From positions 186,001 to 250,000 of IMG/VR virus record IMGVR_UViG_3300037294_000266: a stretch of 64,000 nucleotides of DNA. One strand, given 5' to 3'. Numbering within the stretch: position 1 is the first letter of the stretch; the number at the start of each line of letters is the position of its first letter. Both the position numbers and the translations under genes were made by a program. This document shows, piece by piece, positions 21 to 62,944 of the stretch. The notes under the pieces were generated by a model, which saw only the letters and a list, made by a program, of their open reading frames with translations, was not told the origin of the DNA and searched no databases.

Positions 21-75
21 AAAAAGAAAAAAAGAACGGATGGAGAGGGAGCCGAAAGGCTCCCTCTTTATGCCG
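21..75. terminator. Bidirectional hairpin terminator (U-tract on - strand, TATGCCG tail on + strand)
   Basis: Stem AGAGGGAGCC-GAAA-GGCTCCCTCT (44-67), A-tract 21-36, TATGCCG 69-75; directly downstream of the - strand gene ending at 80. Confidence 0.75.
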
Positions 76-79
76 CCGG

Positions 80-1129
80 TTACGAAACGTACGTCAGAAC
101 AAACGGACGTAGATGTTTGGCATCTACCATGAAGGCAGTGCCATCTTCAGTGCGAGTCAAGTGCGACCCAATGGTTACCAGCCCACGCCCTGCACGAGTA
201 GAGTCTGCCTTCTTGACGATGAACTTCTTCTCTACCGCATCAAAATCACTGATGCGATAAAGCTCTTTCTCACCTTCGACTTCAACGTACTGATGGAACT
301 GAGGAATCCATGACAACCGCGCTGTATCAGCAACCTGCGGCTTTTCCTGGAACCCAGTGAGCATGGTGACGAAGAACATCGCCGTCACTGTACTGGTCTT
401 GAACTCAGGTACCGTCATTACAGGAGATGCCCGACCTGTGTTCTCACACACGCGGTAGTAGTGGCAGTTGGAGTCATGACGAAGGAACGTAATGAGCTGC
501 TCGCCATTGACTTCTGAAATCGCCACATCGACCGAATCGCCAGGGAAGCGCATGCCCTGCTTATCAATGATCGAATAGGCTGCTTTGATCCAACGGCCTT
601 CCATCAGATGCTGAAGGTATTCGAATGAAGCAACGTCGTCGAACGTAACGCGATAAGTATCGCCACGATCACCATCAAGGTTAACCTGATGGCGAGCAGG
701 GCGTTGCATCGCGTTGCCATGTTTAACAGCGGCAGTCGGAACGGTGGCCGGATCGTCACCGAATGCCTTAAGGACATCTTCAGCGACGTTACTTGCAGCA
801 GGTACCCACTTGAAGCTGAACACCGCATAGATAGGACCTGCAAGCGAAGGATAGGCCATCACGGTCCCACAAGCCACCACAATCATCCAATGCTCGACTT
901 TCCCGTCGGCTACGGTAGTGAGGACCAGTTTGCGATGTTTATTGCCCGACTCCAGTGTGACAATATTGACCTCAGAGTCTTTCGTTAAATTAACAGCGGC
1001 AGCGGTCGTCTGACAACGCACATAGCCGTATTCTTCACACTGCTTGAAAAATGCGTCGAACGAGTTATTGCTAACGAACTTACCGTCGTTAAGTTGTTTG
1101 AAAGTGCCTTTACCAGTAGAAGCTGTCAT
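80..1129 (-). CDS. Hypothetical early protein (349 aa)
   Basis: Long ORF, SD GAGAGGAA upstream, early-promoter motif at 1176-1205; no recognisable domain. Confidence 0.8.
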   Translation of the reverse strand: MTASTGKGTFKQLNDGKFVSNNSFDAFFKQCEEYGYVRCQTTAAAVNLTKDSEVNIVTLESGNKHRKLVLTTVADGKVEHWMIVVACGTVMAYPSLAGPIYAVFSFKWVPAASNVAEDVLKAFGDDPATVPTAAVKHGNAMQRPARHQVNLDGDRGDTYRVTFDDVASFEYLQHLMEGRWIKAAYSIIDKQGMRFPGDSVDVAISEVNGEQLITFLRHDSNCHYYRVCENTGRASPVMTVPEFKTSTVTAMFFVTMLTGFQEKPQVADTARLSWIPQFHQYVEVEGEKELYRISDFDAVEKKFIVKKADSTRAGRGLVTIGSHLTRTEDGTAFMVDAKHLRPFVLTYVS

Positions 1130-1175
1130 GTTGGTGTTCCTCTCAGGTGGTTAGGGTTGTATATTCAACTCTATC

Positions 1176-1205
1176 ATGTATCCGTAAAACAAATTCGAAT
1201 CGACA
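1176..1205 (-). promoter_or_regulatory. Putative early (virion RNAP) promoter
   Basis: + strand ATGTATCCGTAAAACAAATTCGAATCGACA matches the ATGTAT-N12-TTCGAATCG motif also at 3387, 4508, 62624 and 62876, always upstream of - strand genes. Confidence 0.65.
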
Positions 1206-1231
1206 TAAAGGCCGGCATCGGCCGACCCTAG

Positions 1232-1618
1232 TCAATGAACCTGAGTATGCACTGGATAGTCAAAGACCACCCATCCCTTCGCAGTACGTACCGCCCAGTC
1301 ATTACTCGACCATGTTCTCTTCACATCTCTGCCGTACGGCGTAGCGTGTTTTAGAGGAGGTTGGAGGTTGTTGCGATTCTTGACGAGGTCCAGGATAAAC
1401 GAGCCTGTCCTGATAACGATCCTGATATCTAGAATCGCCTCATTGCTGTCCATGGCGCGTATATCTAAATATCCCTCACTACCATGGCCGTGAATACCGT
1501 TGTCGTCTTCTACAGCCCTTAGAAGAGCTTCCAGGGCTGTATGATTGAAGGCTGACTCGATGGAATCACGCTCACCATCATAAGGAGTGATATACGCACT
1601 CTTTATCTGAACTGTCAT
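1232..1618 (-). CDS. Hypothetical protein (128 aa)
   Basis: ORF with ATGA overlap to the upstream gene. Confidence 0.65.
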   Translation of the reverse strand: MTVQIKSAYITPYDGERDSIESAFNHTALEALLRAVEDDNGIHGHGSEGYLDIRAMDSNEAILDIRIVIRTGSFILDLVKNRNNLQPPLKHATPYGRDVKRTWSSNDWAVRTAKGWVVFDYPVHTQVH

Positions 1619-2157
1619 GTGTCTTTACTGCCATCGATGACCTTGAAACGTGCTCGCCGTATTTTCTTTTCTTCTGCTGCTATAGCGGTACGGTTAGCAA
1701 GTTCAGCATGCAGTGTTTCACCGACTGTAATAAACGACAGCGCAGAAAGAACGCTACACAGGTCTTCCACCGGATAGAAAACAAAGGCTTCGCCATTATC
1801 AACCATCTGAACATCACCGGCTGCATCCTCCCCCAAGGAATAATCAGGCATGACATTGAATCGATTCTCATCGAGACCGACATCAATGATCATTACATCG
1901 ACAACGCCTTCGTAATCTAGAAACACGATCCGAAGCCGGTAGTCGTAAATATCCCAAGGTGAATTAAAGAACGTGATGTCGATAGAGTCGTTATCAGGAT
2001 CGTCTTCATCAATGACAGATGTATTCCCAACGTAGCTAGGTGCTGAGCCGAGCTGATACCGCCAGACCTCACTACCTACGATTGCTTTATCGATTCGATC
2101 ACGGATTCCTCGGATTGCTCCAACGAACGCACTCTCCATAACAACACATTTACTCAT
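1615..2157 (-). CDS. Hypothetical protein (180 aa)
   Basis: ORF with SD GAGGT. Confidence 0.75.
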   Translation of the reverse strand: MSKCVVMESAFVGAIRGIRDRIDKAIVGSEVWRYQLGSAPSYVGNTSVIDEDDPDNDSIDITFFNSPWDIYDYRLRIVFLDYEGVVDVMIIDVGLDENRFNVMPDYSLGEDAAGDVQMVDNGEAFVFYPVEDLCSVLSALSFITVGETLHAELANRTAIAAEEKKIRRARFKVIDGSKDT

Positions 2158-2169
2158 GACTACCTCGAT

Positions 2170-2191
2170 GAGGGTATGACGTCATACCCTC
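2170..2191. repeat. Perfect 22-bp palindrome GAGGGTATGACGTCATACCCTC
   Basis: Self-complementary intergenic sequence between two - strand genes. Confidence 0.8.
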
Positions 2192-2200
2192 TGACCATTG

Positions 2201-2719
2201 CTACTTCTGACTGATAGACGCCAAGTTAACAAAACGACGCCGGGTCATGTGGAGTTCCGGTTTAGTTTCGTCTTTGGTAATGTTATCAATGCGCTTCGTC
2301 AGCGCTGTCAGAGCTTTGCTTTGGTTACGGGTGGTGCGAGGAGAGTTCAGACGACGACTGATGTAAAAGCCCATGCCGCACGACGTCAAGGTGATGAGGT
2401 ACGCTTTGATCTTCGGATCTTCAGTGATCTCGATGCCCATCCCAGCACGCTCTTCTTCACTGAGAGCTACCAGTTCGAGAACTGCTTGCTTATGCTCACG
2501 CACCAGATCGTCAATTCGTTTCTGCAATGGCGCTGCTAACGAGCAACCGTAGAAGAACTTATCGTCACCGTGAATAACTTTATCACGAGCGCGGGTGCGT
2601 ACTTCGCTTTGGTTAATCAGATCATCCGTCATCACCAGACGGAAGTAGAAACCTTTGCTCAGGAACTCAGTGGACAATTCCTTGAACTCAGTAGCTAGAA
2701 ACTGATTATCTGTACTCAT
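2201..2719 (-). CDS. Hypothetical protein (172 aa)
   Basis: ORF with SD AGGGG. Confidence 0.75.
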   Translation of the reverse strand: MSTDNQFLATEFKELSTEFLSKGFYFRLVMTDDLINQSEVRTRARDKVIHGDDKFFYGCSLAAPLQKRIDDLVREHKQAVLELVALSEEERAGMGIEITEDPKIKAYLITLTSCGMGFYISRRLNSPRTTRNQSKALTALTKRIDNITKDETKPELHMTRRRFVNLASISQK

Positions 2720-2740
2720 TGTGGACCCCTAGTCAATGCC

Positions 2741-2788
2741 AGAAAAAAGATACAACATAAACATCCAGCCGCGTTTAGCGGCTGGATG
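2741..2788 (-). terminator. Hairpin terminator
   Basis: CATCCAGCCGC/GCGGCTGGATG stem followed on - strand by TTTATGTTGTATCTTTTTTCT. Confidence 0.7.
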
Positions 2789-2806: not shown

Positions 2807-3286
2807 TTACTTAGCGAACGAGGTCGCGAAGCTTTCACTTACGTAGGTCAGTACGCGCTTCAGATCGCCACGCTTGGCATTGGCGCCGGAGTCCAGCTTG
2901 ACGGATACAGAACCAAACTTCTCTTTCTCTTCGCCAGTGGTCGGCACGCGAACCATCTGAACGCGATCAACCGCAGCGCGGATGACGTCAGCGCCGAATT
3001 CAAGGGATGCAGTGGCACGAGCCATGTCAGCATTCTTCTTCATGGCAGGGAGAGCAGCGTTGCCCAGACCCAGAGCCAAACCGCCGGCGAAGGTGGCTTC
3101 GGTGTCTTGAACCAGACGCACGGTTTCCAGAGTCAGCTCTTCGTTACCGCTGGCCAAAGCCAGGTTGTCTTTAACGAAGGTTTCCGGAATTACGGCAGCG
3201 CCGTCATCGTCAAACGAGAGTGCTGCTTCGACTGCTGCACCGACCAATTTGATCTTTTCGTCGACTTTGTTGAGAGCTTCGCTCAT
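2807..3286 (-). CDS. Hypothetical protein (159 aa), probably highly expressed early gene
   Basis: Strong SD AGGAGT, own promoter motif (3387) and terminator (2741-2788). Confidence 0.8.
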   Translation of the reverse strand: MSEALNKVDEKIKLVGAAVEAALSFDDDGAAVIPETFVKDNLALASGNEELTLETVRLVQDTEATFAGGLALGLGNAALPAMKKNADMARATASLEFGADVIRAAVDRVQMVRVPTTGEEKEKFGSVSVKLDSGANAKRGDLKRVLTYVSESFATSFAK

Positions 3287-3386
3287 TGGTGTACTCCTAG
3301 GATTGAAATATTGATCAACACGTGTTAGCGCACATCAGTAGCCCGTATCGTTTTATTTTACGATAGTGCCTGTATACAACTTGATA

Positions 3387-3416
3387 ATGTATCTTTCTAA
3401 AAACATTGAATTGAAT
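3387..3416 (-). promoter_or_regulatory. Putative early promoter (degenerate copy)
   Basis: ATGTAT-CTTTCTAAAAAC-ATTGAATTG, same spacing as the consensus. Confidence 0.55.
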
Positions 3417-3428
3417 CCGTAAAACAAC

Positions 3429-3464
3429 AAAAAAGAAAAGACCCGGTTAAGGGGGTCTTTTCTT
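3429..3464 (-). terminator. Intrinsic terminator of the small-membrane-protein operon
   Basis: AAGAAAAGACCC/GGGTCTTTTCTT stem with U-tract on - strand. Confidence 0.7.
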
Positions 3465-3475: not shown

Positions 3476-3715
3476 TTACGCCTGTTCTGCGGCACTATCA
3501 GCCAGATCTTTAACCACTTTGTTGAGAGCATCCTCAACCACAGCAGGTACATCGATCTGAAGGGCCTTACGGGCCTTGTAACGGCGGCGCAGGTAAACAC
3601 CACCACCAATGGTGGCACCAGTGCCAACAACGATGCCAGTGGCCGCCAGGGGATTTGCTTTGACTGCTTCGATAACTACTTGAGCAGCTGCTTTAACGGT
3701 TTCGAGAAAAGCCAT
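3476..3715 (-). CDS. Small single-pass membrane protein (79 aa)
   Basis: SD AGGAGA; hydrophobic Gly-rich segment LAATGIVVGTGATIGGGVYL followed by RRRYK. Confidence 0.75.
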   Translation of the reverse strand: MAFLETVKAAAQVVIEAVKANPLAATGIVVGTGATIGGGVYLRRRYKARKALQIDVPAVVEDALNKVVKDLADSAAEQA

Positions 3716-3768
3716 GATGTGATCTCCTGATCAGTAGGGTATTGCATTAAGAGGGTTGGGTGTTGCAC

Positions 3769-3915
3769 TTAGCAGCGAGTCGCGCCGCGAAGCTTCTTTT
3801 GTTGCTTAGCGTTATAACGATCGGCAATGATACCGATTACCGCGAGTGTCAGCGTAAACACCGTAACGATGCCTACGTCAATCATACAACCGTACTCAGC
3901 GTAGGCAGCGAACAT
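3769..3915 (-). CDS. Small membrane protein (48 aa; not in ORF track)
   Basis: MFAAYAEYGCMIDVGIVTVFTLTLAVIGIIADRYNAKQQKKLRGATRC; SD AAGGAG; TM plus basic tail. Confidence 0.65.
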   Translation of the reverse strand: MFAAYAEYGCMIDVGIVTVFTLTLAVIGIIADRYNAKQQKKLRGATRC

Positions 3916-3919
3916 GGTG

Positions 3920-4051
3920 TTACTCCTTGGATTCAGAACGTGAAGCTTTGAGGAATTCGTTTTCTTTACGGAGAGCTTTACGCTCTTCGCTGTTAGACTT
4001 CAGATACCACCCGGCTGCGAAGCCACAGATGAGGATGAATACTTCTTTCAT
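3920..4051 (-). CDS. Small membrane protein (43 aa; not in ORF track)
   Basis: MKEVFILICGFAAGWYLKSNSEERKALRKENEFLKASRSESKE; SD AAGGAG. Confidence 0.7.
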   Translation of the reverse strand: MKEVFILICGFAAGWYLKSNSEERKALRKENEFLKASRSESKE

Positions 4052-4062
4052 GTCAATACTCC

Positions 4063-4446
4063 TTAAGCGAGGTGGCGAAGCATTTCTTCGCCAGTGATGA
4101 GGGTGATGGCTGCAACAGTTGCAGCACCTTCAGGACCAACGTTGTCCATCCATTCTTTAAAGCCTTCCATAACAGACTTGACAACCGAGCCGTCTGGGTC
4201 ATCTATTTCAGAGAACAGAACCCCATTGCGAACTACACCATCTTTCAGGATGGCAGACGGATCTTTAACAAACTTATCAACAGCCATCTGTACAACTTCT
4301 TCAACCACCAGCTCGGAGTTGATGTACGGTGCTGCAAGATCCATCATGATCTGTGTACGGCCGGCAAGTTGTGCAGATACCTTGATGTCGCCGATAGCCA
4401 TAGCAACGGCGGTAGTCAAAGACAGTGCGAGGATTTGGTTTTTCAT
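4063..4446 (-). CDS. Hypothetical early protein (127 aa), hydrophobic N-terminus
   Basis: SD GGAGA; first gene after the 4508 promoter motif. Confidence 0.8.
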   Translation of the reverse strand: MKNQILALSLTTAVAMAIGDIKVSAQLAGRTQIMMDLAAPYINSELVVEEVVQMAVDKFVKDPSAILKDGVVRNGVLFSEIDDPDGSVVKSVMEGFKEWMDNVGPEGAATVAAITLITGEEMLRHLA

Positions 4447-4507
4447 TTTATTTCTCCAGATAGAAATGGGTAATTGGATAGGTTAGTTGTCCTATCTCAC
4501 CCTAGTC

Positions 4508-4537
4508 ATGTATTGTTGAAATAAATTCGAATCGTAT
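4508..4537 (-). promoter_or_regulatory. Putative early promoter; exact 30-bp repeat of 62624-62653
   Basis: ATGTATTGTTGAAATAAATTCGAATCGTAT is identical at both loci. Confidence 0.75.
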
Positions 4538-4544
4538 TTCTAGA

Positions 4545-4578
4545 CGGCATACAGGGAGAGCCGAAGCTCTCCCTGTAT
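4545..4578 (-). terminator. Hairpin-TATGCCG terminator ending the head/vRNAP operon
   Basis: ATACAGGGAGAGC-CGAA-GCTCTCCCTGTAT, read on - strand into TATGCCG; no U-tract. Confidence 0.7.
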
Positions 4579-4586
4579 ATTTCGAC

Positions 4587-5840: not shown

Positions 5841-7147
5841 TTCTTCTCTTCCTTTACAGTCTTCTTCAAGACATCATTGGCGATCATGGTGATGTTGCGA
5901 TAAACATAAGAAGCGTGGTCTTCCATCATGGTGGCCAGCGACTTACCCAGGAACATGTATTGCGAAACGCTACGACGAGCAGACCGGTGCAGAGCACGAA
6001 GTTCTCGTAACCGAACAGCGTTCTCAGTAGACGACTTCTCAGTATTGACATGATCGTACGCGTCGTCCATGTCGCCTGAGAGGCGTTGTACCTTCTCACT
6101 CATAGTGGCAGCCATCTGAGCGAACTTAACCGCTCTGGTGTTCAGGTTGATGGCCTGGTCAAGACATTTGATAAATGCATTGACATCAGTTTCACCGCCA
6201 GACGCTTTAATCTGGCCAGTGACCTGCTTCTTAGCCAAGACGATGTTAATGCCAACCACCCCTTTGACTGACTTAACTTCACCACCCACCGAGAAACCAT
6301 GGATTGACTTTTTAGCCAATTTAGTAACTAGGTTGTTTTCATCTTTCTCTTTGGTAGAGAACTTCCAAGCCGACGCCGTCGCCTTAAATGTTGGATAACC
6401 GCGTTTATCAAGATAGACCACACGATTGCCAAGCAGATGAAATTTAGTAAGGTCAGTAAACTCTGTACGATCCAGGATTTGCTCGTCGAAATAATCGATC
6501 GCATCACGGATGTTCTCATTGGAGTCTGAGTTACAAGCCTCACGGAAACGCTTGCCAAAGTCAGTTGATTTCTCAGCCATGACTTTATAATGCTTTTCCA
6601 ACGCATCAATGAACTTGAGGTCTTCGTCGATGCAGGTGACAATGTTCTTAACCGGCTTATTATCACGGGTCAGGAAGGTGTACGCGCTGGCTGTGTCAAT
6701 CATCACAGGACGTGCAACGATATCGTCCTTATGTTCACTGATCCGCCCACGGATGTTCACAAGATCTTTACCGAATGTCTTCAGGTTCAAGGTGATTGAA
6801 TTGAAGGTGCGTTTCAGTTCTTGGATTAAATTCGATTCCATGGAAGGGCTGTTAAGCATCTCCATGGTGGCACTGATCTCATCGGACAGAGCTAGGCCAG
6901 TCACCGCATTGCCTGTGGCAATCTCACGGTGGTTAGCGCGCCAGTCACGGTATGTCTGTTCTGCTTCCAGAACATCCACCACCGATCCGTCTGCCATGGT
7001 CATCTGTTCTACACAGCTTTCCAAGACAATACGACTGTCAGCAATATCTGCCATTTCTGAGATAACTGGCAAAGCAGGAGCCAGAGTTGCCTCTGACTCC
7101 AGTTGCTCAGCAGCACCCACCAACATCGAGTTGATGGTACCTTGCAT
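5837..7147 (-). CDS. Virion head/internal protein, likely paralogue of the adjacent gene
   Basis: Acidic propeptide ending PSME; (L/M)GNR motif shared with the neighbour; operon context. Confidence 0.65.
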   Translation of the reverse strand: MQGTINSMLVGAAEQLESEATLAPALPVISEMADIADSRIVLESCVEQMTMADGSVVDVLEAEQTYRDWRANHREIATGNAVTGLALSDEISATMEMLNSPSMESNLIQELKRTFNSITLNLKTFGKDLVNIRGRISEHKDDIVARPVMIDTASAYTFLTRDNKPVKNIVTCIDEDLKFIDALEKHYKVMAEKSTDFGKRFREACNSDSNENIRDAIDYFDEQILDRTEFTDLTKFHLLGNRVVYLDKRGYPTFKATASAWKFSTKEKDENNLVTKLAKKSIHGFSVGGEVKSVKGVVGINIVLAKKQVTGQIKASGGETDVNAFIKCLDQAINLNTRAVKFAQMAATMSEKVQRLSGDMDDAYDHVNTEKSSTENAVRLRELRALHRSARRSVSQYMFLGKSLATMMEDHASYVYRNITMIANDVLKKTVKEEKK

Positions 7148-8684: not shown

Positions 8685-8725
8685 CCTGATGATAGCCGAG
8701 GGACAATGTCCCTCGGCTCATTTAC

Positions 8726-16412: not shown

Positions 16413-16497
16413 AACAGAGTCCTGTGATTTCCATAGGCCGATTAAGACAGTTGGTATGAGGGAGGCTTAGTATTTTAAGCCCATAGGAGAATTTTCG

Positions 16498-22710: not shown

Positions 22711-22715
22711 CTCAT

Positions 22716-22750
22716 AGGTGAGAGGGGCGACCCTCTCACCTTTATTTTCT
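22716..22750 (+). terminator. Intrinsic terminator
   Basis: AGGTGAGAGGG-GCGA-CCCTCTCACCT followed by TTATTTTCT. Confidence 0.7.
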
Positions 22751-22763
22751 TCAGAGGTTAGGT

Positions 22764-24871: not shown

Positions 24872-24909
24872 CGGCATACAGGGAGGGCGTTTGCCCTCCC
24901 TGTATGTTG
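24872..24909. terminator. Bidirectional hairpin-TATG terminator
   Basis: CATACAGGGAGGGC-GTTT-GCCCTCCCTGTATG between convergent genes; TATGTTG (+) and TATGCCG (-). Confidence 0.75.
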
Positions 24910-25924: not shown

Positions 25925-25975
25925 CAAAGAAAAAAAGAAAGGAGATGGAAGATGGGGGCCGGAGCCCCCATCTAT
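25925..25975 (-). terminator. Intrinsic terminator
   Basis: AGATGGGGGC/GCCCCCATCT stem with U-tract on - strand. Confidence 0.65.
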
Positions 25976-33069: not shown

Positions 33070-33115
33070 CAGCATAAAATCGATGGGAGGGCACAAGTCC
33101 CTCCCATCTATGCCG
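33070..33115. terminator. Bidirectional hairpin-TATG terminator
   Basis: GATGGGAGGGC-ACAA-GTCCCTCCCATC followed by TATGCCG; TATGCTG on - strand. Confidence 0.7.
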
Positions 33116-37346: not shown

Positions 37347-37392
37347 AAGTAAGACAGTGGGGCATCCGCCCCACTTAATCGATGAGGTAGTT

Positions 37393-37998: not shown

Positions 37999-38050
37999 CA
38001 ACATAGAGAGAGAGAGAGGAGCCGTGAGGCTCCTCTCTCTCTCTATGTCA
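37999..38050. terminator. Bidirectional (GA)n/(TC)n hairpin-TATG terminator
   Basis: CATA(GA)nGGAGCC-GTGA-GGCTCC(TC)nTATG between convergent genes. Confidence 0.75.
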
Positions 38051-41665: not shown

Positions 41666-41706
41666 CGGCATAAGCGGAGGAGGGACATCCCTCCTCCGCT
41701 ATGTTG
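41666..41706. terminator. Bidirectional hairpin-TATG terminator
   Basis: CGGCATA-AGCGGAGGAGGG-ACAT-CCCTCCTCCGCT-ATGTTG. Confidence 0.75.
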
Positions 41707-45500: not shown

Positions 45501-45569
45501 CCATTAACACGCTACCTCGAAAGGGGTAGCGTGTGTTATTCGAACCCCTTTTCGTGATGGAGCCTCTTC

Positions 45570-52110: not shown

Positions 52111-52148
52111 CGTCATAGAGACCGGGCTGATGCCCGGTCTCTATGTTG
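52111..52148. terminator. Bidirectional hairpin-TATG terminator
   Basis: CATAGAGACCGGGC-TGAT-GCCCGGTCTCTATG. Confidence 0.75.
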
Positions 52149-53212: not shown

Positions 53213-53303
53213 CGGAGACTCCTGATGTTTAGACCATATAAGACCACAGGTAAGTAAAACATAACGATACAATCCCTATGTAATCTTTAATGCTGAGGTC
53301 GAC

Positions 53304-53552: not shown

Positions 53553-53556
53553 GTCC

Positions 53557-53724
53557 ATGACAACTATCTTCGACACGCAAGACAAACCTTTCAAGCCACT
53601 TGAGAAAGATGACGAGTGGCTGTACCAGAAGATGAAGGAGCAGCAAGCGTCTGGTGATGTACGTCGAGATTTCCACAATGAATGGCTTGCACAGCCACCT
53701 GTTATCGAAACATCTGAGGACTGA
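53557..53724 (+). CDS. Small acidic protein (55 aa; not in ORF track)
   Basis: MTTIFDTQDKPFKPLEKDDEWLYQKMKEQQASGDVRRDFHNEWLAQPPVIETSED fills the gap before rSAM3. Confidence 0.6.
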   Translation: MTTIFDTQDKPFKPLEKDDEWLYQKMKEQQASGDVRRDFHNEWLAQPPVIETSED

Positions 53725-53727
53725 TCT

Positions 53728-54816: not shown

Positions 54817-54819
54817 TTC

Positions 54820-56795: not shown

Positions 56796-57744
56796 TCTGA
56801 CCCTTGAGATTCTACAGGGGTGTAAGTACAACTGCGTAGGCTGTATGGTCGATAAAGACTACGAGCCTCTTATTCCATTTGACCAGGACACGGATAAGAT
56901 CCTTGAAATGGTCGATGCGATGAAAGCTGAAGGGTATCGGACTCGAGAGTTTACAATCGGGCCAGTGGATGTCATCAGCTCGAAGACAGGGGATTCGATA
57001 TTCGATCATCGCTTGATTAAGGGGCTGGCTGAGCGGTTTGAATCTGTCGTCATTCCGTTAGCACTGATGAAAGGGAAGTCGTTTACACTGGCCACTCCTT
57101 TCCAGCTAAAGAGTACTGACAACCCTAAACACGTCGATCTAATAAAGCGTCGTGTGATGTTCATCCAAGCGTCATTGCCTGACGTTAAATTTGAGCTACT
57201 GTACATTACCGTTAACATGATTGGCGATGCAGTAGATGCATTTGATGTTGCATTAAACCGAAGACTCCATGATATTGATTTTGGTGTCAGACGACTCATT
57301 GAGTTTGTATTCCCTCACCCTAGAAAGGGGTTGGATAATTTACTCATGCAGAACTTGTTTAAGCGCAACTTCGGACATTTCTGTGACGTCATTAAACAGT
57401 GTAAGAACACTGATCTAAATCGTCATCTCATTAAACCAGCTGATGATAGCTACGAAACAACCTATCGTGATGGCAGACTGTATTACACACCGACACTGAT
57501 CGAGAAGTTTCCTATATTCGATCCGATGTTTGAAATAACGTCTCCATGGACTCTCGAGAAGATAGAGCTGTTCAAGATGGATCTCTATCTAGACAGTCTG
57601 GTTAAATATTCAGTGAGCGGACCGTGCAGTAAGTGTTGTAATTTAAGTAAGTGTGCTGAGGGCGATGTTCACTCCATCATGACTCATTTGAATGACTCGA
57701 CTTGTCTGGTATCTCTTTATAACGACTGGAGTGTGATAACGTGA
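56764..57744 (+). CDS. Atypical radical SAM-like protein 6 (paralogue of 5)
   Basis: CKYNCVGC; IGPVD; C-terminal CSKCCNLSKC..C. Confidence 0.8.
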   Translation: MLNQPQSPAFNLTLEILQGCKYNCVGCMVDKDYEPLIPFDQDTDKILEMVDAMKAEGYRTREFTIGPVDVISSKTGDSIFDHRLIKGLAERFESVVIPLALMKGKSFTLATPFQLKSTDNPKHVDLIKRRVMFIQASLPDVKFELLYITVNMIGDAVDAFDVALNRRLHDIDFGVRRLIEFVFPHPRKGLDNLLMQNLFKRNFGHFCDVIKQCKNTDLNRHLIKPADDSYETTYRDGRLYYTPTLIEKFPIFDPMFEITSPWTLEKIELFKMDLYLDSLVKYSVSGPCSKCCNLSKCAEGDVHSIMTHLNDSTCLVSLYNDWSVIT

Positions 57745-58178
57745 GTAAGGAAGAACAGCTTACTTTTATTCAGTTAGAACAGATGCCTTTTCCAGATTGG
57801 CTGATAGACGCTGTCCTTTGTGAACCTAACAAAGCGTTCATTGAGACAGCGTCTATCAACGACTACGTCAACAGCATCATACTGCCAATTGTTGCTGATG
57901 AACTCAACTGGCCAGACAATCTGCAAGTGACAGCAAACCATGTCCATTGTAGCAGTGACGGACTCGAGCCACACGACCATCTCCCTCACGAATACACTTC
58001 AGTACTCTATCTCATTGATGCCGAAGGTGATCTGATTGTTCATGACGATGGCGAACACCGTGTCACGCCAGCAGAAGGTCGGTTTGTTCTGATGGACGCT
58101 CGTCTTAAACACAGTGTTGAACCATCCAACTGCATGCGTATTTCTCTGGTGACCAACTATGCAACCACCTGCCTATAA
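57741..58178 (+). CDS. Fe(II)/2OG-dependent oxygenase
   Basis: PHDH...YTSVLYL...LKHSVEP...RISLVTN. Confidence 0.82.
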   Translation: MSKEEQLTFIQLEQMPFPDWLIDAVLCEPNKAFIETASINDYVNSIILPIVADELNWPDNLQVTANHVHCSSDGLEPHDHLPHEYTSVLYLIDAEGDLIVHDDGEHRVTPAEGRFVLMDARLKHSVEPSNCMRISLVTNYATTCL

Positions 58179-58593
58179 AGACTATCAACTGCTCTACGAT
58201 GAATATGTCCAAGAGCATGCTGACGATTTTGCTAACATGGAAATCGTTGAGGATCCTGAACTTGTGGAAAACGCGCTCCATTACTTCAAGGAAGCGTCTT
58301 TCCCGCTCATCTATCCGGCTAAGAGTTATGCGGTGGCTATCATTTACGCCACTAAGATTCATGAACTCTACGATATCCCAGTCAAGACGACCTTGAATGA
58401 TCCCGATCTATTCTTAGGACATGACCGGTACTTCGTTCCGTATGAGCTAGATCCCCACACCTACGACGCTATCTTGGCTCGCTTAGAGACTATTCCTAAT
58501 TGGATGGAATCTGGCTGGGCTCCGCAGTCGGTGAAGTACTGTCTTTTAGAATGTACTGAAGACGGTGTCAACTCGGTATTGAGCGGAGAGTGA
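58159..58593 (+). CDS. Hypothetical protein in the rSAM cluster (144 aa)
   Basis: Acidic ORF overlapping its neighbours; IYPAKSYAVAIIYA core. Confidence 0.75.
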   Translation: MQPPAYKDYQLLYDEYVQEHADDFANMEIVEDPELVENALHYFKEASFPLIYPAKSYAVAIIYATKIHELYDIPVKTTLNDPDLFLGHDRYFVPYELDPHTYDAILARLETIPNWMESGWAPQSVKYCLLECTEDGVNSVLSGE

Positions 58594-58595
58594 CC

Positions 58596-59153
58596 ATGAA
58601 CTATCTAGAGCCGTGGAAGACTGAGATCGGGCATTTCAACGTGGCTGATCAGTTTGACATGACGGCCTTTGGTGAAGAGATATTTACGTTATTTGCCATG
58701 ACCAATGGAGAGGACGAAAGTCAACGTAAGATTGACCCTTCGACGTTTCCTGTCCTTCTGAAGATGCGTGATGAAACAATAACGCCAGCGGTCATTGAAT
58801 ATACGAAACGTTGTTTCAACTACGACATGGATAAGTTCTATGTTGAAAGTAATGGTAAGTGGATTGCAGAAGGTGAGGGACTGTATCCACATTGGCATCC
58901 TGGCTCAGTCATCTCGGTCATCTGCTATCCAGTAGATTCTGCAAATGGTTTGAACATGTTCGATCCTAAGGGGAACGCCATTCGGGGTTATCCTAAAGAG
59001 ATGCGATGGGGACATTTTGCCAACTTGAACATCTCGCCTAAAGCAGGTGACATCTTCATATTCCCCAGTTACCTCCAACACAGCGTAAGTCATGTGACAG
59101 AAGAGGTGCGGTTGTCTCTGCTCCACGAGTATTATGTCACCCACAATTTATAG
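58596..59153 (+). CDS. Fe(II)/2OG oxygenase, TIGR02466-like
   Basis: HWHPGSVISVICYP, FDP, PKAGDIFIFPSYLQHSV, RLSL. Confidence 0.87.
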   Translation: MNYLEPWKTEIGHFNVADQFDMTAFGEEIFTLFAMTNGEDESQRKIDPSTFPVLLKMRDETITPAVIEYTKRCFNYDMDKFYVESNGKWIAEGEGLYPHWHPGSVISVICYPVDSANGLNMFDPKGNAIRGYPKEMRWGHFANLNISPKAGDIFIFPSYLQHSVSHVTEEVRLSLLHEYYVTHNL

Positions 59154-59165
59154 GAAGTACGTACA

Positions 59166-59717
59166 ATGAAAATCATTCAGCCGTGGAAGATAGAGATCGC
59201 CCAGTACAATCTTCTCGAACAGGTGGATAACAGTGCCATCACCGAAGAAGTCCACATGCTTCACTGCCTATCTCCACGTGACTCTCTGACACCTCTGGTA
59301 GTGACTCCAGAGCAATTCCCAGCGTTGTGTCACTTCCGTGACAAGATTGTTCACGGACTGGTGGTTGATTACATTCGCCGAGTGTTCGGTGTTGAGCCAT
59401 TCGATATTGCTACCGATACGTTTGGCAAGGTGTTCGACAAGCAACAAGGACTTGGCAGTCACTTGCATGGCAACTCGTGCCTGACGAGCGTGTACTATCC
59501 TAGCGATTCTGATGCAGGGATGTCTCTGGCAGACCCGCGCTTCAATGCATCTCGTGGATATCCGCGTTCGATACGTGATAACCACTTTGGCGAGTTCTAT
59601 GTGGCGCCTAAGGCAGGTGATCTCTGGATCATGCCTAGCTATATCCAGCACAGTGTTGCTCCAAGTACAGAAGAGATGCGTCTCTCTCTAATCAATGACT
59701 TTCATTTCAAGGCATAA
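59166..59717 (+). CDS. Fe(II)/2OG oxygenase, TIGR02466-like (tandem paralogue)
   Basis: HLHGNSCLTSVYYP, DPR, PKAGDLWIMPSYIQHSV, RLSL. Confidence 0.87.
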   Translation: MKIIQPWKIEIAQYNLLEQVDNSAITEEVHMLHCLSPRDSLTPLVVTPEQFPALCHFRDKIVHGLVVDYIRRVFGVEPFDIATDTFGKVFDKQQGLGSHLHGNSCLTSVYYPSDSDAGMSLADPRFNASRGYPRSIRDNHFGEFYVAPKAGDLWIMPSYIQHSVAPSTEEMRLSLINDFHFKA

Positions 59718-59719
59718 TC

Positions 59720-60379
59720 ATGACTGATGAAGAGAATGGCTTGTATCCAGGTGTAGACCGTGGCATGTTCCGGGTCATGCGTCTTCTAGATAACTCAGGT
59801 GTCCAATTGAAAGCACAGGTACGGATCAAGAATCTGTCTGTCTTCAACTTCCTGAGCGATCTCCAATATGCTGTAATTGGCTATGGTCTCGAATGGTGGC
59901 GTGATGGTGAACCAGGTCCTCATGAGGCCGGTGAAGCAAATCCGTACATCCCACGCGGCCGTCCTAACATCAGTCGGTTGTACTTCAGGGGTAAGACCAG
60001 TATTACTCCAAAGATGTTGCACTTAGAGGATGCGGTCATCAATGACTTCATCAACTCTAAAGCTCTGGCTGATCCGATGACATACTCGACGTATGCATTG
60101 GAAGCCGCTGAACAAACCAGCAGTGCGGCTGTATGGCGTGATCTGGGTAAAACAGCATTCCAGTATGCCAACGCAGTTCATATTACCAAGTTAGAAGCTT
60201 CCTCCACCACCCCTCTTGAAATTGTGGTTGAGGGTCTGCGCTTCGAGTACCGTCGTAAAGCGTCTCCAGATATTGTGAAGACTGCAGACATTAAACCGTA
60301 CAAGTTCACCAAACTTCGTGATTGTTACGAAGCCATGCAAACATTTATCGAAAATGAGGTTACCAATGGCGATTTCTAA
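59720..60379 (+). CDS. Hypothetical protein (219 aa)
   Basis: Last ORF of the cluster; overlaps the endolysin start. Confidence 0.75.
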   Translation: MTDEENGLYPGVDRGMFRVMRLLDNSGVQLKAQVRIKNLSVFNFLSDLQYAVIGYGLEWWRDGEPGPHEAGEANPYIPRGRPNISRLYFRGKTSITPKMLHLEDAVINDFINSKALADPMTYSTYALEAAEQTSSAAVWRDLGKTAFQYANAVHITKLEASSTTPLEIVVEGLRFEYRRKASPDIVKTADIKPYKFTKLRDCYEAMQTFIENEVTNGDF

Positions 60380-61085
60380 GAATCGACTCATGGATCTACA
60401 GCGTGACATGAAAGCACTGGGTGTTTACTTCGGTGGTATCGATGGTGCATGGGGTCAGTTGTCCCACGGTGCATTTGTAAATGCTCGTCGAATGGCCAGT
60501 AAGAACAAGACAACCGCGCCTGAAGGCATGAGCGAATTATTGTTCACATACTGTAAAGCCCACGCATGGTCTGACAAAGTCAGTGACGAGTTCATTCTCG
60601 AGACCAAACGTATTGCCACTGATCTTGGCATGACGTTCCAAGGTACTGACGAATTATTGTCCTGCATGGCCTTCGAAACCGGTGAGACCTTCTCACCGAC
60701 AATCAAGAACGGTGCCGGTGCTCCGTACTACGGCATTATCCAGTTTGGCGCAGCGGCTGCCAAAGATGCAGGCACGTCTATTCCTGCATTGTTGAAGATG
60801 ACCAACGTAGAACAGCTTCAGTATGTCTACAACTTCTTCAAGCCTTACAAAGGCAAGTTGAATGATTTGTCTGACTGTTACATGCGCATACTCTGGCCTG
60901 CCGCAGTCGGTAAACCTTCTGATTACGTGCTGTTCGACAAGATGAATGCCAAGTCTAAAGCGTATGTTCAGAACAAAGGTCTGGACATCGACAAGGACGG
61001 GAAGATTACAAAAGCTGAAGCGGCTGCTAAAGTGATGCAGAAGCTTGTAGCTGGCTTACATCCAGGTAACCTGCGTGTAGCTTAA
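60366..61085 (+). CDS. Modular endolysin (peptidoglycan-binding domain + lysozyme-like/transglycosylase domain)
   Basis: LQRDMKALGVY.GGIDGAWG (PG-binding), MAFETG catalytic Glu, GIIQF, EF-hand-like DIDKDGKITKAE; start MAISK (SD GAGGT). Confidence 0.85.
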   Translation: MAISKNRLMDLQRDMKALGVYFGGIDGAWGQLSHGAFVNARRMASKNKTTAPEGMSELLFTYCKAHAWSDKVSDEFILETKRIATDLGMTFQGTDELLSCMAFETGETFSPTIKNGAGAPYYGIIQFGAAAAKDAGTSIPALLKMTNVEQLQYVYNFFKPYKGKLNDLSDCYMRILWPAAVGKPSDYVLFDKMNAKSKAYVQNKGLDIDKDGKITKAEAAAKVMQKLVAGLHPGNLRVA

Positions 61086-61086
61086 C

Positions 61087-61136
61087 AAAGAAAAAAAAGA
61101 AAGCTAGAGGGAGCCCTGGGGCTCCCTCTTATGCCG
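61087..61136. terminator. Bidirectional terminator (TATGCCG on +, U-tract on -)
   Basis: Stem AGAGGGAGCC/GGCTCCCTCT identical to the stem at 44-67. Confidence 0.8.
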
Positions 61137-62039: not shown

Positions 62040-62043
62040 TGTA

Positions 62044-62205
62044 TTACTTCTTAGTAGCAGCTGCGATTTCAATTGTTGCTGCCTGCATTGCACTGATTTG
62101 ACGGCGAGCCAACATCCGAGCACGTACTTTAGATGTCAAGTAGACATCTGTGAGAAATGCAGCAGTGATCGAGATAACGGCGGAGATGATGATTTTCTCT
62201 TTCAT
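62044..62205 (-). CDS. Small membrane protein (53 aa; not in ORF track)
   Basis: MKEKIIISAVISITAAFLTDVYLTSKVRARMLARRQISAMQAATIEIAAATKK; ATGA coupling, SD AAGGA. Confidence 0.7.
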   Translation of the reverse strand: MKEKIIISAVISITAAFLTDVYLTSKVRARMLARRQISAMQAATIEIAAATKK

Positions 62206-62432
62206 GATAATGTTCCTTCTACTTCATCGATATTAAGGGATTCGGCTAATTTACGTTCAGCTTCTAAAAGCTCGTAGGTAGCGTGCGTCACGCCGTATTT
62301 AATCGAAGCTTCTGTATAGCGCTTGGCGATGAGTTTATCGATCTTGCCTTGCACTGGCGTGATGCGTTTAATACCTTCGTACAGAAAGGTACCAACGATA
62401 CTCGCAGTCATGAGACATAACAACTCTTTCAT
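62202..62432 (-). CDS. Small membrane protein (76 aa)
   Basis: N-terminal hydrophobic segment; SD GGGAGAG. Confidence 0.75.
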   Translation of the reverse strand: MKELLCLMTASIVGTFLYEGIKRITPVQGKIDKLIAKRYTEASIKYGVTHATYELLEAERKLAESLNIDEVEGTLS

Positions 62433-62459
62433 GGTACTCTCCCTGAATCAGTTATCGGA

Positions 62460-62567
62460 TTAACCGCGTGCTGCTTTCTTCGCAGCAAGGCGCTTCATGA
62501 GCAGTTGATACTGATCAATGACGATGTAGGTGCCAGCCAGTACAGCAATGGAGGATAGAATCTTCAT
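62460..62567 (-). CDS. Small membrane protein (35 aa; not in ORF track)
   Basis: MKILSSIAVLAGTYIVIDQYQLLMKRLAAKKAARG; SD AGGAGT. Confidence 0.65.
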   Translation of the reverse strand: MKILSSIAVLAGTYIVIDQYQLLMKRLAAKKAARG

Positions 62568-62623
62568 GGTGTTACTCCTGAGTAGAGGTTATGACAGGAT
62601 CGTTTGTCCTTATCACCTGTACT

Positions 62624-62653
62624 ATGTATTGTTGAAATAAATTCGAATCGTAT
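62624..62653 (-). promoter_or_regulatory. Putative early promoter; exact repeat of 4508-4537
   Basis: Identical 30-mer upstream of the small-gene operon. Confidence 0.75.
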
Positions 62654-62706
62654 AAATAAACAAAAAGAAAAGAGGGCTTGAGCCCCCAGTGATTATCACG
62701 GCAAAT

Positions 62707-62870
62707 CGGCATAAAGACAGCCAGGGGCGGAGGCACTGTTGGCCTGTCCGCTTACCTGTAACTGTCCGGGGATGTTGGTACCTGTCCCCTACATCATAAA
62801 GGAGAGTTGTTTTTATTTACCATAAAGGGTTTCATTCTCAAACATACTGGAGTAGTGAATCACTTCGTGT
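62707..62870 (-). ncRNA. Candidate structured small RNA
   Basis: No convincing ORF; bounded by a promoter-like motif (62876) and a TTTATGCCG end; nested stems GACAG/CTGTC, CAGG/CCTG, GCGGA/TCCGC. Confidence 0.35.
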
Positions 62871-62875
62871 TAATG

Positions 62876-62902
62876 ATGTATGGTTACTTTTAGTTTCAAT
62901 CA
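62876..62902 (-). promoter_or_regulatory. Putative early promoter (degenerate)
   Basis: ATGTAT-GGTTACTTTTAG-TTTCAATCA, same spacing as the consensus. Confidence 0.45.
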
Positions 62903-62913
62903 AATAAAGAATC

Positions 62914-62944
62914 CGGCATAGAGGAGGAGCAACTGCTCCTCCTC
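62914..62944 (-). terminator. Hairpin-TATGCCG terminator
   Basis: GAGGAGGAGC-AACT-GCTCCTCCTC, followed on - strand by TATGCCG. Confidence 0.7.

What the first reader, a model, noticed from the sequence alone, without database searches (positions are those of the whole stretch)
44..62944. Family of gene-end hairpins followed by TATG(C/T)(C/T)G instead of a U-tract
Seen: GC-rich stems ending in TATGCCG/TATGTTG or close variants at 44-75, 1201-1223, 2753-2788, 4545-4578, 24872-24909, 33070-33115, 37999-38050, 41666-41706, 52111-52148, 61106-61136, 62707 and 62914-62944. At five convergent junctions (24.9, 33.1, 38.0, 41.7, 52.1 kb) the motif is on both strands. At 61.1 kb the late endolysin side reads TATGCCG while the early-operon side reads a U-tract; the stems at 44 and 61106 are identical. 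Established: TATG is the core late-promoter element of the phiKZ non-virion RNAP. Inference: a sequence-specific terminator class for the phage nvRNAP, distinct from U-tract terminators of early units, or RNA processing sites or antisense promoters.
Basis: partly seen in the sequence, partly recalled or inferred. Interest (0 to 1): 0.65.

Follow-up and report, generated by a model that had tools for sequence, protein, structure and literature searches.

The report
Jumbo-phage terminators with a TATG tail
These are the transcription stop signals of a phiKZ-like giant phage: a strong RNA hairpin followed by (T)TATG-Y-Y-G instead of a run of U, a type already mapped in phages phiKZ and 201phi2-1, so the pattern is real but not new.

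Summary
All 12 sites exist. TATGYYG is not over-represented in the window (25 copies against 28.6 in shuffles). Its placement is far from random: 15 of 25 copies lie in the 5% of bases that are intergenic, next to GC-rich hairpins just after stop codons and pointing the way the gene does.

The window belongs to a 266.6-kb phiKZ-like phage from a salt-lake metagenome. Genome-wide, 40 of 101 gene-end hairpin sides carry TATKYYG, against 5 of 75 wrongly oriented sides and 0 of 92 hairpin sides inside genes.

The consensus, (T)TTATG-Y-Y-G-T, is the published phiKZ terminator motif and 201phi2-1 "motif A". I placed the eight published 201phi2-1 termination sites on that genome. All eight are hairpin plus this tail, and in seven the RNA ends at the second Y, just before the invariant G. 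Those eight also stop transcription in uninfected Pseudomonas, so they are not specific to the phage's non-virion polymerase.

Units starting at early-type promoters end in U-tracts about five times more often (five genomes, p = 6e-9). No RNA data exist for this phage.

Verdict: a new member of a known terminator family. Why the tail shares TATG with the late promoter is still open.

The parts
19..75 (.). Asymmetric two-way terminator: A-run 19-35, stem 44-53/58-67 (loop GAAA), TTATGCCG 68-75. The + side is TATG-type and follows the + gene ending at 11. The - side has a T-run 7 nt after the stem and follows the - gene 80-1129, which is driven by the early-type promoter at 1169-1208.
1201..1223 (-). 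Short (5-bp) GC stem followed by TTTATGTCG, after gene 1232-1618. The tail abuts the early-type promoter at 1169-1208.
2753..2788 (-). 11-bp stem with a 5-nt loop, followed by TTTATGTTG and then a T-rich stretch. It closes the one-gene unit 2807-3286 driven by the early-type promoter at 3380-3419.
3419..3464 (-). U-tract terminator (12-bp stem, then a T-run). It closes the four-gene unit 3476-4446 driven by the early-type promoter at 4501-4540.
4545..4584 (-). 13-bp stem with a UUCG loop on the - strand, followed by TATGCCG. It closes the long - strand block that holds the virion-RNAP beta-like genes, and the early-type promoter at 4501-4540 follows 4 nt later. The + strand reads TATTTCG.
22716..22755 (+). 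U-tract-like terminator (11-bp stem, then TTTATTTTCTT) after the 2070-aa gp181-like virion gene. This is a non-early unit with a U-type stop.
24872..24909 (.). Two-way TATG-type terminator that fills the gap between convergent genes 22764-24869 (+) and 24910-25911 (-): CGGCATA, 10-bp GC core, TATGTTG.
33070..33115 (.). Two-way TATG-type terminator between 32234-33064 (+) and 33118-33498 (-). The DT01 orthologue keeps the same stem and tail.
37999..38050 (.). Two-way terminator with a 17-bp stem between 37393-37998 (+) and the SbcC-like gene 38056-40524 (-). The + tail is TATGTCA and the - tail is TATGTTG.
41666..41706 (.). Two-way TATG-type terminator between 41402-41665 (+) and 41707-42969 (-).
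52111..52148 (.). Two-way terminator between 51110-52108 (+) and 52154-53212 (-). The + tail is TATGTTG and the - tail is TATGACG.
61087..61136 (.). Asymmetric two-way terminator: A-run, stem 61106-61129 (the same stem as at 44), then TATGCCG. The + side closes the 12-gene + block 53304-61085. The - side, with a T-run 3 nt after the stem, closes the small - strand genes downstream of the early-type promoter at 62617-62656.
62707..62748 (-). Imperfect hairpin (-13.6 kcal/mol) followed by TTTATGCCG, just upstream of the early-type promoter at 62617-62656.
62914..62944 (-). 10-bp stem followed by TATGCCG, 3 nt after the stop of gene 62948-63223.
2170..2191 (-). Gene-end hairpin with neither tail.
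8694..8718 (-). Gene-end hairpin with neither tail; conserved in DT01.
25950..25973 (-). Gene-end hairpin with a UUCG-type loop on the - strand and a displaced T-run.
37356..37375 (+). Gene-end hairpin (8-bp stem) with neither tail.
45507..45534 (+). Gene-end hairpin followed by GTTATTCG (TTAT only); conserved in DT01.

Best explanation
The sites are the phage's transcription terminators. They are the local version of the conserved terminator of phiKZ-like jumbo phages: the phiKZ motif of Putzeys 2024, and motif A (with its stem-lengthening partner, motif B) in 201phi2-1.

Each is a GC-rich RNA hairpin, usually with a tetraloop and often C(UUCG)G. It forms a median of 7 nt after the stop codon and is followed by (U)UUAUG-Y-Y, with an invariant G next on the template.

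By homology, the transcript ends at the second Y, 6-8 nt past the GC core. That is the geometry of hairpin-driven (intrinsic-type) termination. The usual U-tract is replaced by a short UUAU followed by G-Y-Y.

At convergent gene pairs the tail is needed on both strands. The palindrome therefore grows to CRRCATA-stem-TATGYYG. The RNA complement of the tail can then pair almost to the 3' end.

A second class of stops, with ordinary U-tracts, coexists with this one and is preferred at the ends of units driven by the early-type (virion-polymerase) promoter.

Shown here: sequence anatomy, placement, orientation, conservation and class statistics.
Taken from relatives: that RNA ends there, and that host polymerase also stops there.
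Inferred: what the G-Y-Y-G part does. My best guess is a pause or release element, because a pyrimidine at the 3' end with G as the next base is the classic pause signature of multisubunit polymerases (my own knowledge).
For: Placement and orientation.
- TATKYYG flanks 40 of 101 hairpin sides that follow a gene end, 5 of 75 that do not, and 0 of 92 inside genes.
- The median distance from stop codon to stem is 7 nt.
- 15 of 25 window copies are intergenic, where 1.3 are expected.

The hairpin acts as RNA on the gene strand.
- At one-way hairpins the UUCG loop is on the gene strand 7 times to 0 here, and 131 to 2 over seven genomes.

Same motif as mapped terminators.
- The consensus here is T-N-TATG-C/T-C-G-T. 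The phiKZ motif is BCCYCCCCHWWDGGGRRGGBYTTATKYYGT, found at 61 sequenced 3' ends. 201phi2-1 motif A has 59 members.
- All eight published 201phi2-1 termination coordinates fall on hairpin plus TTTATGYYG. Seven of the eight lie at the second Y.
- The same eight terminate in vivo in uninfected P. chlororaphis.

Conservation.
- The tail appears next to gene-end hairpins in this phage (40), DT01 (42), phiKZ (24), 201phi2-1 (33), Ea35-70 (35) and LucasX (44). RSL2 has it with a looser end. These genomes span 37-56% GC.
- 61 of 75 orthologous gene ends keep a hairpin in DT01. 22 of 26 TATG-type ends stay TATG-type, against a base rate of 0.375, although many stems have a different sequence.

The phage is phiKZ-like.
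- It has virion-RNAP beta-like genes and a gp181-like gene in the window, a GP123 homologue and a second beta-like gene.

Hairpin strength.
- TATG-type hairpins are stronger than U-type ones (median -24.8 against -19.2 kcal/mol). That fits a stem compensating for a weak U-tract. Part of the difference comes from the CATA/TATG extension.
Against: - There are no RNA data for this phage. Only DNA metagenome runs hold it, so no 3' end has been observed here.
- A plain 'weak U-tract' model does not explain why A-U-G-Y-Y-G is held nearly invariant across genera of very different GC content.
- It also does not explain why two other phiKZ-like phages, SPN3US and PCH45, and the host-polymerase phage PAK_P3 use only U-tracts.
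- The published 3' ends may be off by up to about 2 nt. The 201phi2-1 paper says so for 5' ends.
- The in vivo terminator-trap assay measures loss of downstream expression, not release of the polymerase.
Confidence: 0.8

Rival explanations
1. The TATGYYG tail is a sequence-specific signal read by the non-virion polymerase, possibly through the same pocket of the beta-like subunit that binds non-template TATG at late promoters. U-tract terminators would serve the virion polymerase on early units. The phage would then have two terminator dialects, one per polymerase.
For: - Early-type units end in U-tracts 47 times and in the TATG type 25 times. Other units end 85 and 222 times. The odds ratio is 4.9, p = 6e-9, and it holds in phiKZ, 201phi2-1 and Ea35-70 alone.
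- At this genome's convergent junctions the split is 6/0 against 1/32.
- G follows TAT in 82-97% of tails in six genomes and in 92% in RSL2.
- GP123 binds non-template TATG in phiKZ. The pocket residues F151, H185, N186, K190, H331, S334 and Q466 are kept in this phage's homologue.
- Sense-strand TATG is strongly avoided inside genes: 607 observed against 1028 in synonymous shuffles, z = -20. The host-polymerase phage PAK_P3 shows no such avoidance (z = -0.7).
Against: - Homologous terminators work with host polymerase in uninfected cells.
- A third of early-type units end in the TATG type, and tandem arrays in this genome show no association.
- The association depends on how a U-tract is defined.
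- The mapped RNA end is 3 nt past the promoter register.
- TATT tails exist, while every substitution within the promoter's TATG abolished or strongly reduced its activity.
- SPN3US also avoids TATG in its genes but has no TATG-type terminators.
Confidence: 0.25
2. The TATG after the hairpin is a working late promoter, with G as +1. Each site would then be a terminator with a built-in restart for the next gene, or an antisense promoter at convergent junctions.
For: - TATG with G as +1 is the late promoter core.
- About half of the one-way TATG-type terminators are followed by a gene with no other recognisable promoter in between.
Against: - 28 of 40 full-motif sides lie at convergent junctions with no same-strand gene downstream.
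- Promoter-like TATG sites in this genome have GAATYC upstream and lack YYG.
- phiKZ P119L reads GCTATG-TAG with no hairpin.
- TATG alone is not sufficient for a promoter.
- Several terminators are followed at once by a separate promoter. At genome position 58060 a TATGCCG is followed directly by AATCCTATG. Early-type promoters follow at 1201, 4545 and 62707 in the window.
Confidence: 0.1
3. The sites are RNA processing or 3'-end protection sites. The hairpin would block exonucleases, and the tail would be a nuclease or protein recognition sequence rather than a place where polymerase stops.
For: Long-read 3'-end mapping cannot by itself tell termination from processing. The tail is conserved as sequence.
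Against: - The 201phi2-1 elements cut downstream reporter expression in a terminator trap in uninfected cells.
- The ends lie 6-8 nt past the GC core at one fixed register.
- The two-way design at convergent genes is what insulation of transcription needs.
Confidence: 0.08
4. The sites are a DNA-level repeat, such as a REP/MITE-like element, a cruciform or a protein-binding site, that merely collects between genes.
For: The seven asymmetric sites (A-run, stem, TATKCCGTC) resemble one another closely, and two share a stem.
Against: - There are 24 different inner stems among 33 tetraloop members.
- Strand-specific features (the tail, the UUCG loop) follow the gene's direction.
- Orthologous sites in DT01 keep the structure and tail while their stem sequence changes.
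Confidence: 0.03

Closest known systems
Conserved phiKZ terminator motif (Putzeys et al. 2024, PMC10914365): BCCYCCCCHWWDGGGRRGGBYTTATKYYGT at 61 mapped 3' ends
   Same: GC-rich stem-loop directly followed by (T)TTAT-K-Y-Y-G-T; placed after genes; two-way copies between convergent genes; the phage carries its own two multisubunit polymerases.
   Different: The stem polarity is reversed. The 5' arm is purine-rich here (0.77 purine) and pyrimidine-rich in phiKZ (0.22). No RNA ends have been measured for this phage.
201phi2-1 terminator motif A, and the A/B combination with a lengthened stem (PMC11512511)
   Same: Same tail. The CATA...TATG extension seen here matches their lengthened stems. Their eight tested sites end at YY before G and work in vivo.
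   Different: Same reversal of stem polarity. Here the extension is mostly tied to two-way sites: 15 of 28 two-way sides against 3 of 12 one-way sides.
Canonical intrinsic (Rho-independent) terminators of bacteria and of host-polymerase phages such as PAK_P3
   Same: Strong hairpin just after the gene. The RNA end lies a few nucleotides past the stem. They work without phage factors (in the relative). Two-way versions occur at convergent genes.
   Different: There is no U-tract, only UUAU followed by G-Y-Y and an invariant G. PAK_P3, SPN3US and PCH45 show essentially only U-tracts in the same pipeline.
phiKZ late promoter (TATG, G = +1; Yakunina 2015; GP123 pocket, IUCrJ 2026)
   Same: [quoted passage not shown]
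   Different: The context differs: a hairpin upstream and YYG downstream, against GAATYC upstream here. The sites lie at gene ends, also where no gene follows. The RNA end lies 3 nt beyond the G.
Sigma70-dependent promoter-proximal pausing (own knowledge, not tested): a promoter-like element recaptured in the bubble, a few nucleotides of scrunching, then a stop at a pyrimidine/G pause site
   Same: On paper the layout fits: the promoter core TATG, then 2-3 nt, then Y at the RNA end with G next.
   Different: Purely an analogy. No pause has been measured for these polymerases, and a hairpin is always present here.
T7 class II (sequence-specific, hairpin-independent) termination signal (own knowledge)
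   Same: A phage polymerase stop signal defined by sequence rather than by a U-run.
   Different: That signal needs no hairpin and acts on a single-subunit polymerase. Here the hairpin is always present.

Membership tests
phiKZ-type conserved terminator (phiKZ motif / 201phi2-1 motif A) | GC-rich stem-loop, mostly a tetraloop | tested here: met
   There are 88 strong intergenic hairpins. 33 of 40 full-motif sides have a 4-nt loop.
phiKZ-type conserved terminator (phiKZ motif / 201phi2-1 motif A) | 3' flank YTTATKYYGT directly after the stem | tested here: met
   The consensus is T-N-TATG-C/T-C-G-T. K is G in 33 of 36.
phiKZ-type conserved terminator (phiKZ motif / 201phi2-1 motif A) | Lies after gene ends in the gene's orientation; two-way at convergent pairs | tested here: met
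   40 of 101 against 5 of 75 sides, p = 2.6e-7. There are 20 two-way sites.
phiKZ-type conserved terminator (phiKZ motif / 201phi2-1 motif A) | RNA 3' ends map to it during infection | not testable with these tools
   Only DNA metagenome runs hold this phage. In 201phi2-1 all eight published sites fall on the tail, seven at the second Y.
phiKZ-type conserved terminator (phiKZ motif / 201phi2-1 motif A) | Carried by a phiKZ-like phage with virion and non-virion multisubunit polymerases | tested here: met
   - Virion-RNAP beta-like genes and a gp181-like gene in the window.
- A GP123 homologue, E = 4e-59.
- A PF00562 beta-like ORF.
- The nearest relative is the jumbo phage DT01.
Canonical intrinsic terminator | Run of U (about 6-8) directly after the stem | tested here: not met
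   TATG-type tails do not reach the U-tract threshold of 6 T in 9 nt. A separate class of 16-21 sides does meet it.
Canonical intrinsic terminator | Factor-independent stop of bacterial polymerase | not testable with these tools
   Known only from the relative: eight 201phi2-1 sites work in uninfected P. chlororaphis.
phiKZ late promoter | TATG core with G as the start | tested here: inconclusive
   TATG is present. No 5'-end data exist for this phage.
phiKZ late promoter | Stands upstream of a gene to be transcribed, in promoter context | tested here: not met
   28 of 40 full-motif sides face a convergent gene. Promoter-like TATG here carries GAATYC upstream and no YYG.
Hairpin-form promoters of the N4 virion-polymerase kind (own knowledge) | Short DNA hairpin just upstream of the start site of early genes | tested here: not met
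   The hairpins sit at gene ends. The early-type promoters found here have no hairpin.

The most novel reading that the evidence does not exclude
phiKZ-like phages have two terminator dialects matched to their two polymerases.
- U-tract hairpins would stop the virion polymerase on early units.
- The hairpin + UAUG-YY^G stops would be read by the non-virion polymerase.

The non-virion polymerase's beta-lobe pocket (GP123) would recapture the promoter core TATG in the bubble. It would then stall after about 3 more nucleotides at a pyrimidine/G pause site, so promoter and terminator would share one recognition element.
Probability: 0.2. Interest if true: 0.75.

Novelty: new member of a known kind. 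Interest (0 to 1): 0.38.

Why it matters
The element itself is ordinary for this phage group. Knowing it allows transcription units to be drawn on uncultured phiKZ-like genomes, and standard terminator finders tuned to U-runs only partly see it.

Three results go beyond the two published maps and can be tested on existing phiKZ and 201phi2-1 data:
- The tail is kept across at least six genera-level lineages spanning 37-56% GC, while the stem polarity flips.
- It is missing from SPN3US and PCH45.
- U-tract stops are about five times enriched at the ends of early-promoter units.

If that preference reflects different termination requirements of the two phage polymerases, it would be the first handle on how these sigma-less, non-canonical multisubunit enzymes terminate.

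Tried and rejected
- A DNA search of the phage collection with 6.2 kb of the window found nothing. The relative DT01 came from a protein search.
- The supplementary tables of both transcriptome papers are not held. I could therefore use only the eight coordinates printed in the 201phi2-1 text, and could not compare start sites with terminators in phiKZ.
- The sequencing-run search found only DNA metagenome runs: a salt lake, the likely source, and a sediment. Read laying was not used because contigs of DNA runs cannot show RNA ends.
- Over-representation of the heptamer is rejected: 25 observed against 28.6 expected.
- CATA avoidance as a phage-specific signal is rejected. The control phage PAK_P3 shows it too.
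- The first, strict test of early units against terminator class in five genomes gave the same direction but no significance. Only the looser U-tract definition, which allows a T-run displaced by up to 7 nt, was significant. Both results are reported.
- The stem 'covariation' count among paralogous sites is circular, because the hairpins were selected for pairing. I do not use it as evidence.
- The GP123 pocket comparison does not separate phages with the tail from those without it, because SPN3US aligns at only 21% identity.
- Pfam gave nothing for six proteins next to the sites.
- The large protein searches, structure prediction and complex prediction were not needed.
- No other genetic code was used.

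Full report
**What the window is.** The window is bases 186001-250000 of a 266,646-bp virus record. The only runs that hold it are DNA metagenomes: a salt lake, the likely source, and a sediment.
- Its nearest named relative is Pseudomonas jumbo phage pPa_SNUABM_DT01. One virion protein is 72.6% identical, and 210 reciprocal best hits average 57%.
- The window encodes two RNA-polymerase beta-like proteins of the virion set and a 2070-aa gp181-like tail/transglycosylase protein.
- Elsewhere the genome has a homologue of phiKZ GP123, the beta-like subunit of the non-virion polymerase, and a second Rpb2-domain ORF.
- It is therefore a phiKZ-like phage with its own two multisubunit polymerases.

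- The heptamer TATGYYG is not over-represented: 25 in the window against 28.6 +/- 5.2 in shuffles.
- Its placement is far from random. 15 of 25 copies lie in the 5.1% of the window that is intergenic (binomial 8e-14). Genome-wide the figure is 55 of 126 in 8.4% (3e-26).
- 56 of 72 intergenic TATKYYG copies have a strong fold just upstream, against 13% of random positions.
- Of 88 strong intergenic hairpins, 40 of the 101 sides that follow a gene end on that strand carry TATKYYG at the stem's 3' edge. Only 5 of 75 sides without a gene end do (Fisher 2.6e-7), and none of 92 sides of hairpins inside genes.
- The hairpin starts a median of 7 nt after the stop codon.
- Where only one strand has a gene end, the UUCG tetraloop is always on that strand: 7 to 0 here and 131 to 2 over seven genomes. 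The hairpin therefore matters as RNA, read in the direction of the gene.

**What it is.** Aligned on TATG, the flank reads T-N-TATG-(C/T)-C-G-T-(C/A). This is the terminator motif already published for phiKZ. There, long-read 3'-end mapping found 133 termination sites, and 61 of them share a stem-loop followed by TTATKYYGT. The 201phi2-1 study found the same thing as 'motif A' (59 sites), with a partner motif that lengthens the stem.

Neither supplement is held, but the 201phi2-1 text prints eight termination coordinates. I placed them on the genome.
- All eight are a hairpin followed by TTTATG-Y-Y-G or a one-letter variant.
- In seven the coordinate is the second Y, immediately before the invariant G. 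In the eighth it is the first Y.
- So in a relative the RNA ends as stem-UUUAUGYY, 6-8 nt beyond the GC core. That is the geometry of hairpin-driven termination.
- The same eight elements stop expression in a terminator trap in uninfected P. chlororaphis, and four do better than lambda T0. Host polymerase therefore also stops at them.

**Conservation.** I ran one pipeline on whole genomes. The table counts gene-end hairpin sides that carry the full tail.

| Genome | Sides with the full tail | Note |
|---|---|---|
| this phage | 40 | |
| DT01 | 42 | |
| phiKZ | 24 | |
| 201phi2-1 | 33 | |
| Erwinia phage Ea35-70 | 35 | |
| Xanthomonas phage LucasX | 44 | |
| RSL2 | 5 | 31 more sides have TATG (G in 92%) with a looser end |
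| EL | 1 | 16 more sides show only TTAT or a bare TATG |
| SPN3US | 0 | 41 U-tract sides |
| PCH45 | 2 | 40 U-tract sides |
| PAK_P3 (host-polymerase control, 50 kb) | 0 | 5 U-tract sides |

- The genomes that have the tail span 37-56% GC.
- The tail is constant, but the stem polarity flips between lineages. The 5' arm is purine-rich (0.73-0.80) in this phage, DT01 and Ea35-70. It is pyrimidine-rich (0.22-0.27) in phiKZ, 201phi2-1 and LucasX.
- Between this phage and DT01, 61 of 75 orthologous gene ends keep a hairpin. 22 of 26 TATG-type ends stay TATG-type, against a base rate of 0.375, although many stems have changed sequence altogether.

Two promoter-like families turned up.
- *Early-type promoter.* A 40-nt motif, GATTCGAA-T-rich-CAAC(A/G)ATACAT(T/G)AT, occurs 27 times. 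All copies are on the - strand, 26-97 nt upstream of genes, and five are in the window. Both non-virion-polymerase beta-like genes lie directly downstream of such sites. In phiKZ these are early genes, so I take the motif to be the early (virion-polymerase) promoter.
- *Middle or late promoter.* (C)GAAT(C/T)CTATG occurs about 15 times upstream of genes, including the virion-polymerase genes. It has no hairpin and no YYG after it. It resembles phiKZ P119L, which reads GCTATG-TAG, and is probably the middle/late promoter.

So promoter-TATG and terminator-TATG sit in different contexts. At genome position 58060 the two stand side by side: TATGCCG followed directly by AATCCTATG.

A second class of terminators has ordinary U-tracts. 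Seven two-way sites, including 44 and 61106 in the window, are asymmetric: A-run, stem, TATKCCGTC.
- At these seven sites the U-tract side always faces a - strand early-type unit.
- At the 20 convergent junctions, sides closing an early-type unit are 6 U-tract and 0 TATG-type. Other sides are 1 and 32 (Fisher 2e-6).
- In tandem arrays of this genome there is no association. TATG-type stops close several one- or two-gene early-type units.
- Across five genomes, with a U-tract allowed to start up to 7 nt after the stem, early-type units end 47 times in a U-tract and 25 times in the TATG type. Other units end 85 and 222 times. The odds ratio is 4.9, p = 6e-9.
- phiKZ, 201phi2-1 and Ea35-70 alone give odds ratio 5.5, p = 5e-6. 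T-rich words 30-70 nt further downstream are not enriched in early-type units.
- A stricter definition gave the same direction without significance.

Neither transcriptome paper mentions it.

**How it most likely works.**
- *Shown:* the anatomy, orientation, conservation and class statistics.
- *Taken from relatives:* RNA ends at YY before G, and host polymerase stops there too.
- *Inferred:* the hairpin drives release as in intrinsic termination. UUAU supplies a short weak hybrid. The conserved G-Y-Y followed by G sets where the polymerase halts, because a pyrimidine at the RNA end with G as the next base is the classic pause signature of multisubunit polymerases (my own knowledge).
- At two-way sites the upstream CRRCAUA can pair with UAUGYYG almost to the RNA end. 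That may help strip the transcript. The 201phi2-1 authors found the lengthened stems to be the stronger terminators.
- TATG-type hairpins are also stronger here: -24.8 against -19.2 kcal/mol.

**The TATG coincidence.** In phiKZ the beta-like subunit GP123 binds non-template TATG at late promoters.
- *For a link with the terminators:* the key pocket residues are kept in this phage. Sense-strand TATG is strongly avoided inside genes here (607 against 1028 in synonymous shuffles, z = -20). It is also avoided in SPN3US (z = -18) and phiKZ (z = -8), but not in PAK_P3 (z = -0.7). It is therefore conceivable that the non-virion polymerase recaptures TATG at terminators, much as sigma70 recaptures -10-like elements at promoter-proximal pauses (my own knowledge).
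- *Against it:* the RNA end is 3 nt beyond the promoter register. About 10% of tails read TATT. The elements work with host polymerase. SPN3US avoids TATG in its genes yet has no such terminators.
- I give this reading about 0.2.

**Verdict.** The sites are terminators of a known, published kind in a new, uncultured member of the group.

Noticed in passing
window 1169-1208, 3380-3419, 4501-4540, 29015-29054, 62617-62656 (all - strand); 27 copies genome-wide: A 40-nt promoter-like family, GATTCGAA-T-rich-CAAC(A/G)ATACAT(T/G)AT, lies 26-97 nt upstream of genes, always on the - strand. Both non-virion-polymerase beta-like genes sit just downstream of copies, so it is probably the early (virion-polymerase) promoter. 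It differs from the TATATTAC core of phiKZ and 201phi2-1.
   Followed up: partly
window 16478-16493 (-), 53272-53281 (+); about 15 copies genome-wide: A second promoter-like motif, (C)GAAT(C/T)CTATG, lies 20-75 nt upstream of genes, including the virion-polymerase beta-like genes. It has no hairpin and no YYG after it. It is probably the middle/late promoter with the TATG start.
   Followed up: partly
whole genome (coding regions); also phiKZ, SPN3US: TATG is strongly avoided on the sense strand of genes compared with synonymous-codon shuffles: z = -20 here, -18 in SPN3US and -8 in phiKZ. The host-polymerase phage PAK_P3 shows none (z = -0.7). CATA is also avoided, but in the control too. There is only one control genome.
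   Followed up: partly
comparison of nine phiKZ-like genomes: The tail is constant but the stem polarity flips between lineages. The 5' arm is purine-rich in this phage, DT01 and Ea35-70, and pyrimidine-rich in phiKZ, 201phi2-1 and LucasX. This is unexplained.
   Followed up: no
SPN3US (NC_027402) and PCH45 (MN334766): These two phiKZ-like phages of enterobacteria show almost no TATG-type terminators (0 and 2) and about 40 U-tract terminators each. RSL2 has TATG with a looser end, and EL has mainly TTAT.
   Followed up: partly
G000 1-127 and 266418-266544: The first 127 bases of the record recur near its end, including an early-type promoter and a TATG-type terminator. This suggests terminal redundancy or an assembly overlap, although the record is classed as linear without end repeats.
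   Followed up: partly
Its PHROG matches are a family of unknown function, 'baseplate hub' and 'peptidase'. Its function is open.
   Followed up: partly
window 22711-22763: The hairpin with a TTTATTTTCTT tail lies in the 53-nt gap between the gp181-like gene and the next virion gene. The 201phi2-1 paper reports a conserved small RNA in the leader of the gp182 homologue. I did not test whether this is related.
   Followed up: no
genome 6623 (between the early-type promoter at 6660 and gene 6040-6591): A gene-end-type hairpin sits inside a 5' leader just after a promoter. It may be an attenuator, like the leader terminators reported for phiKZ.
   Followed up: no
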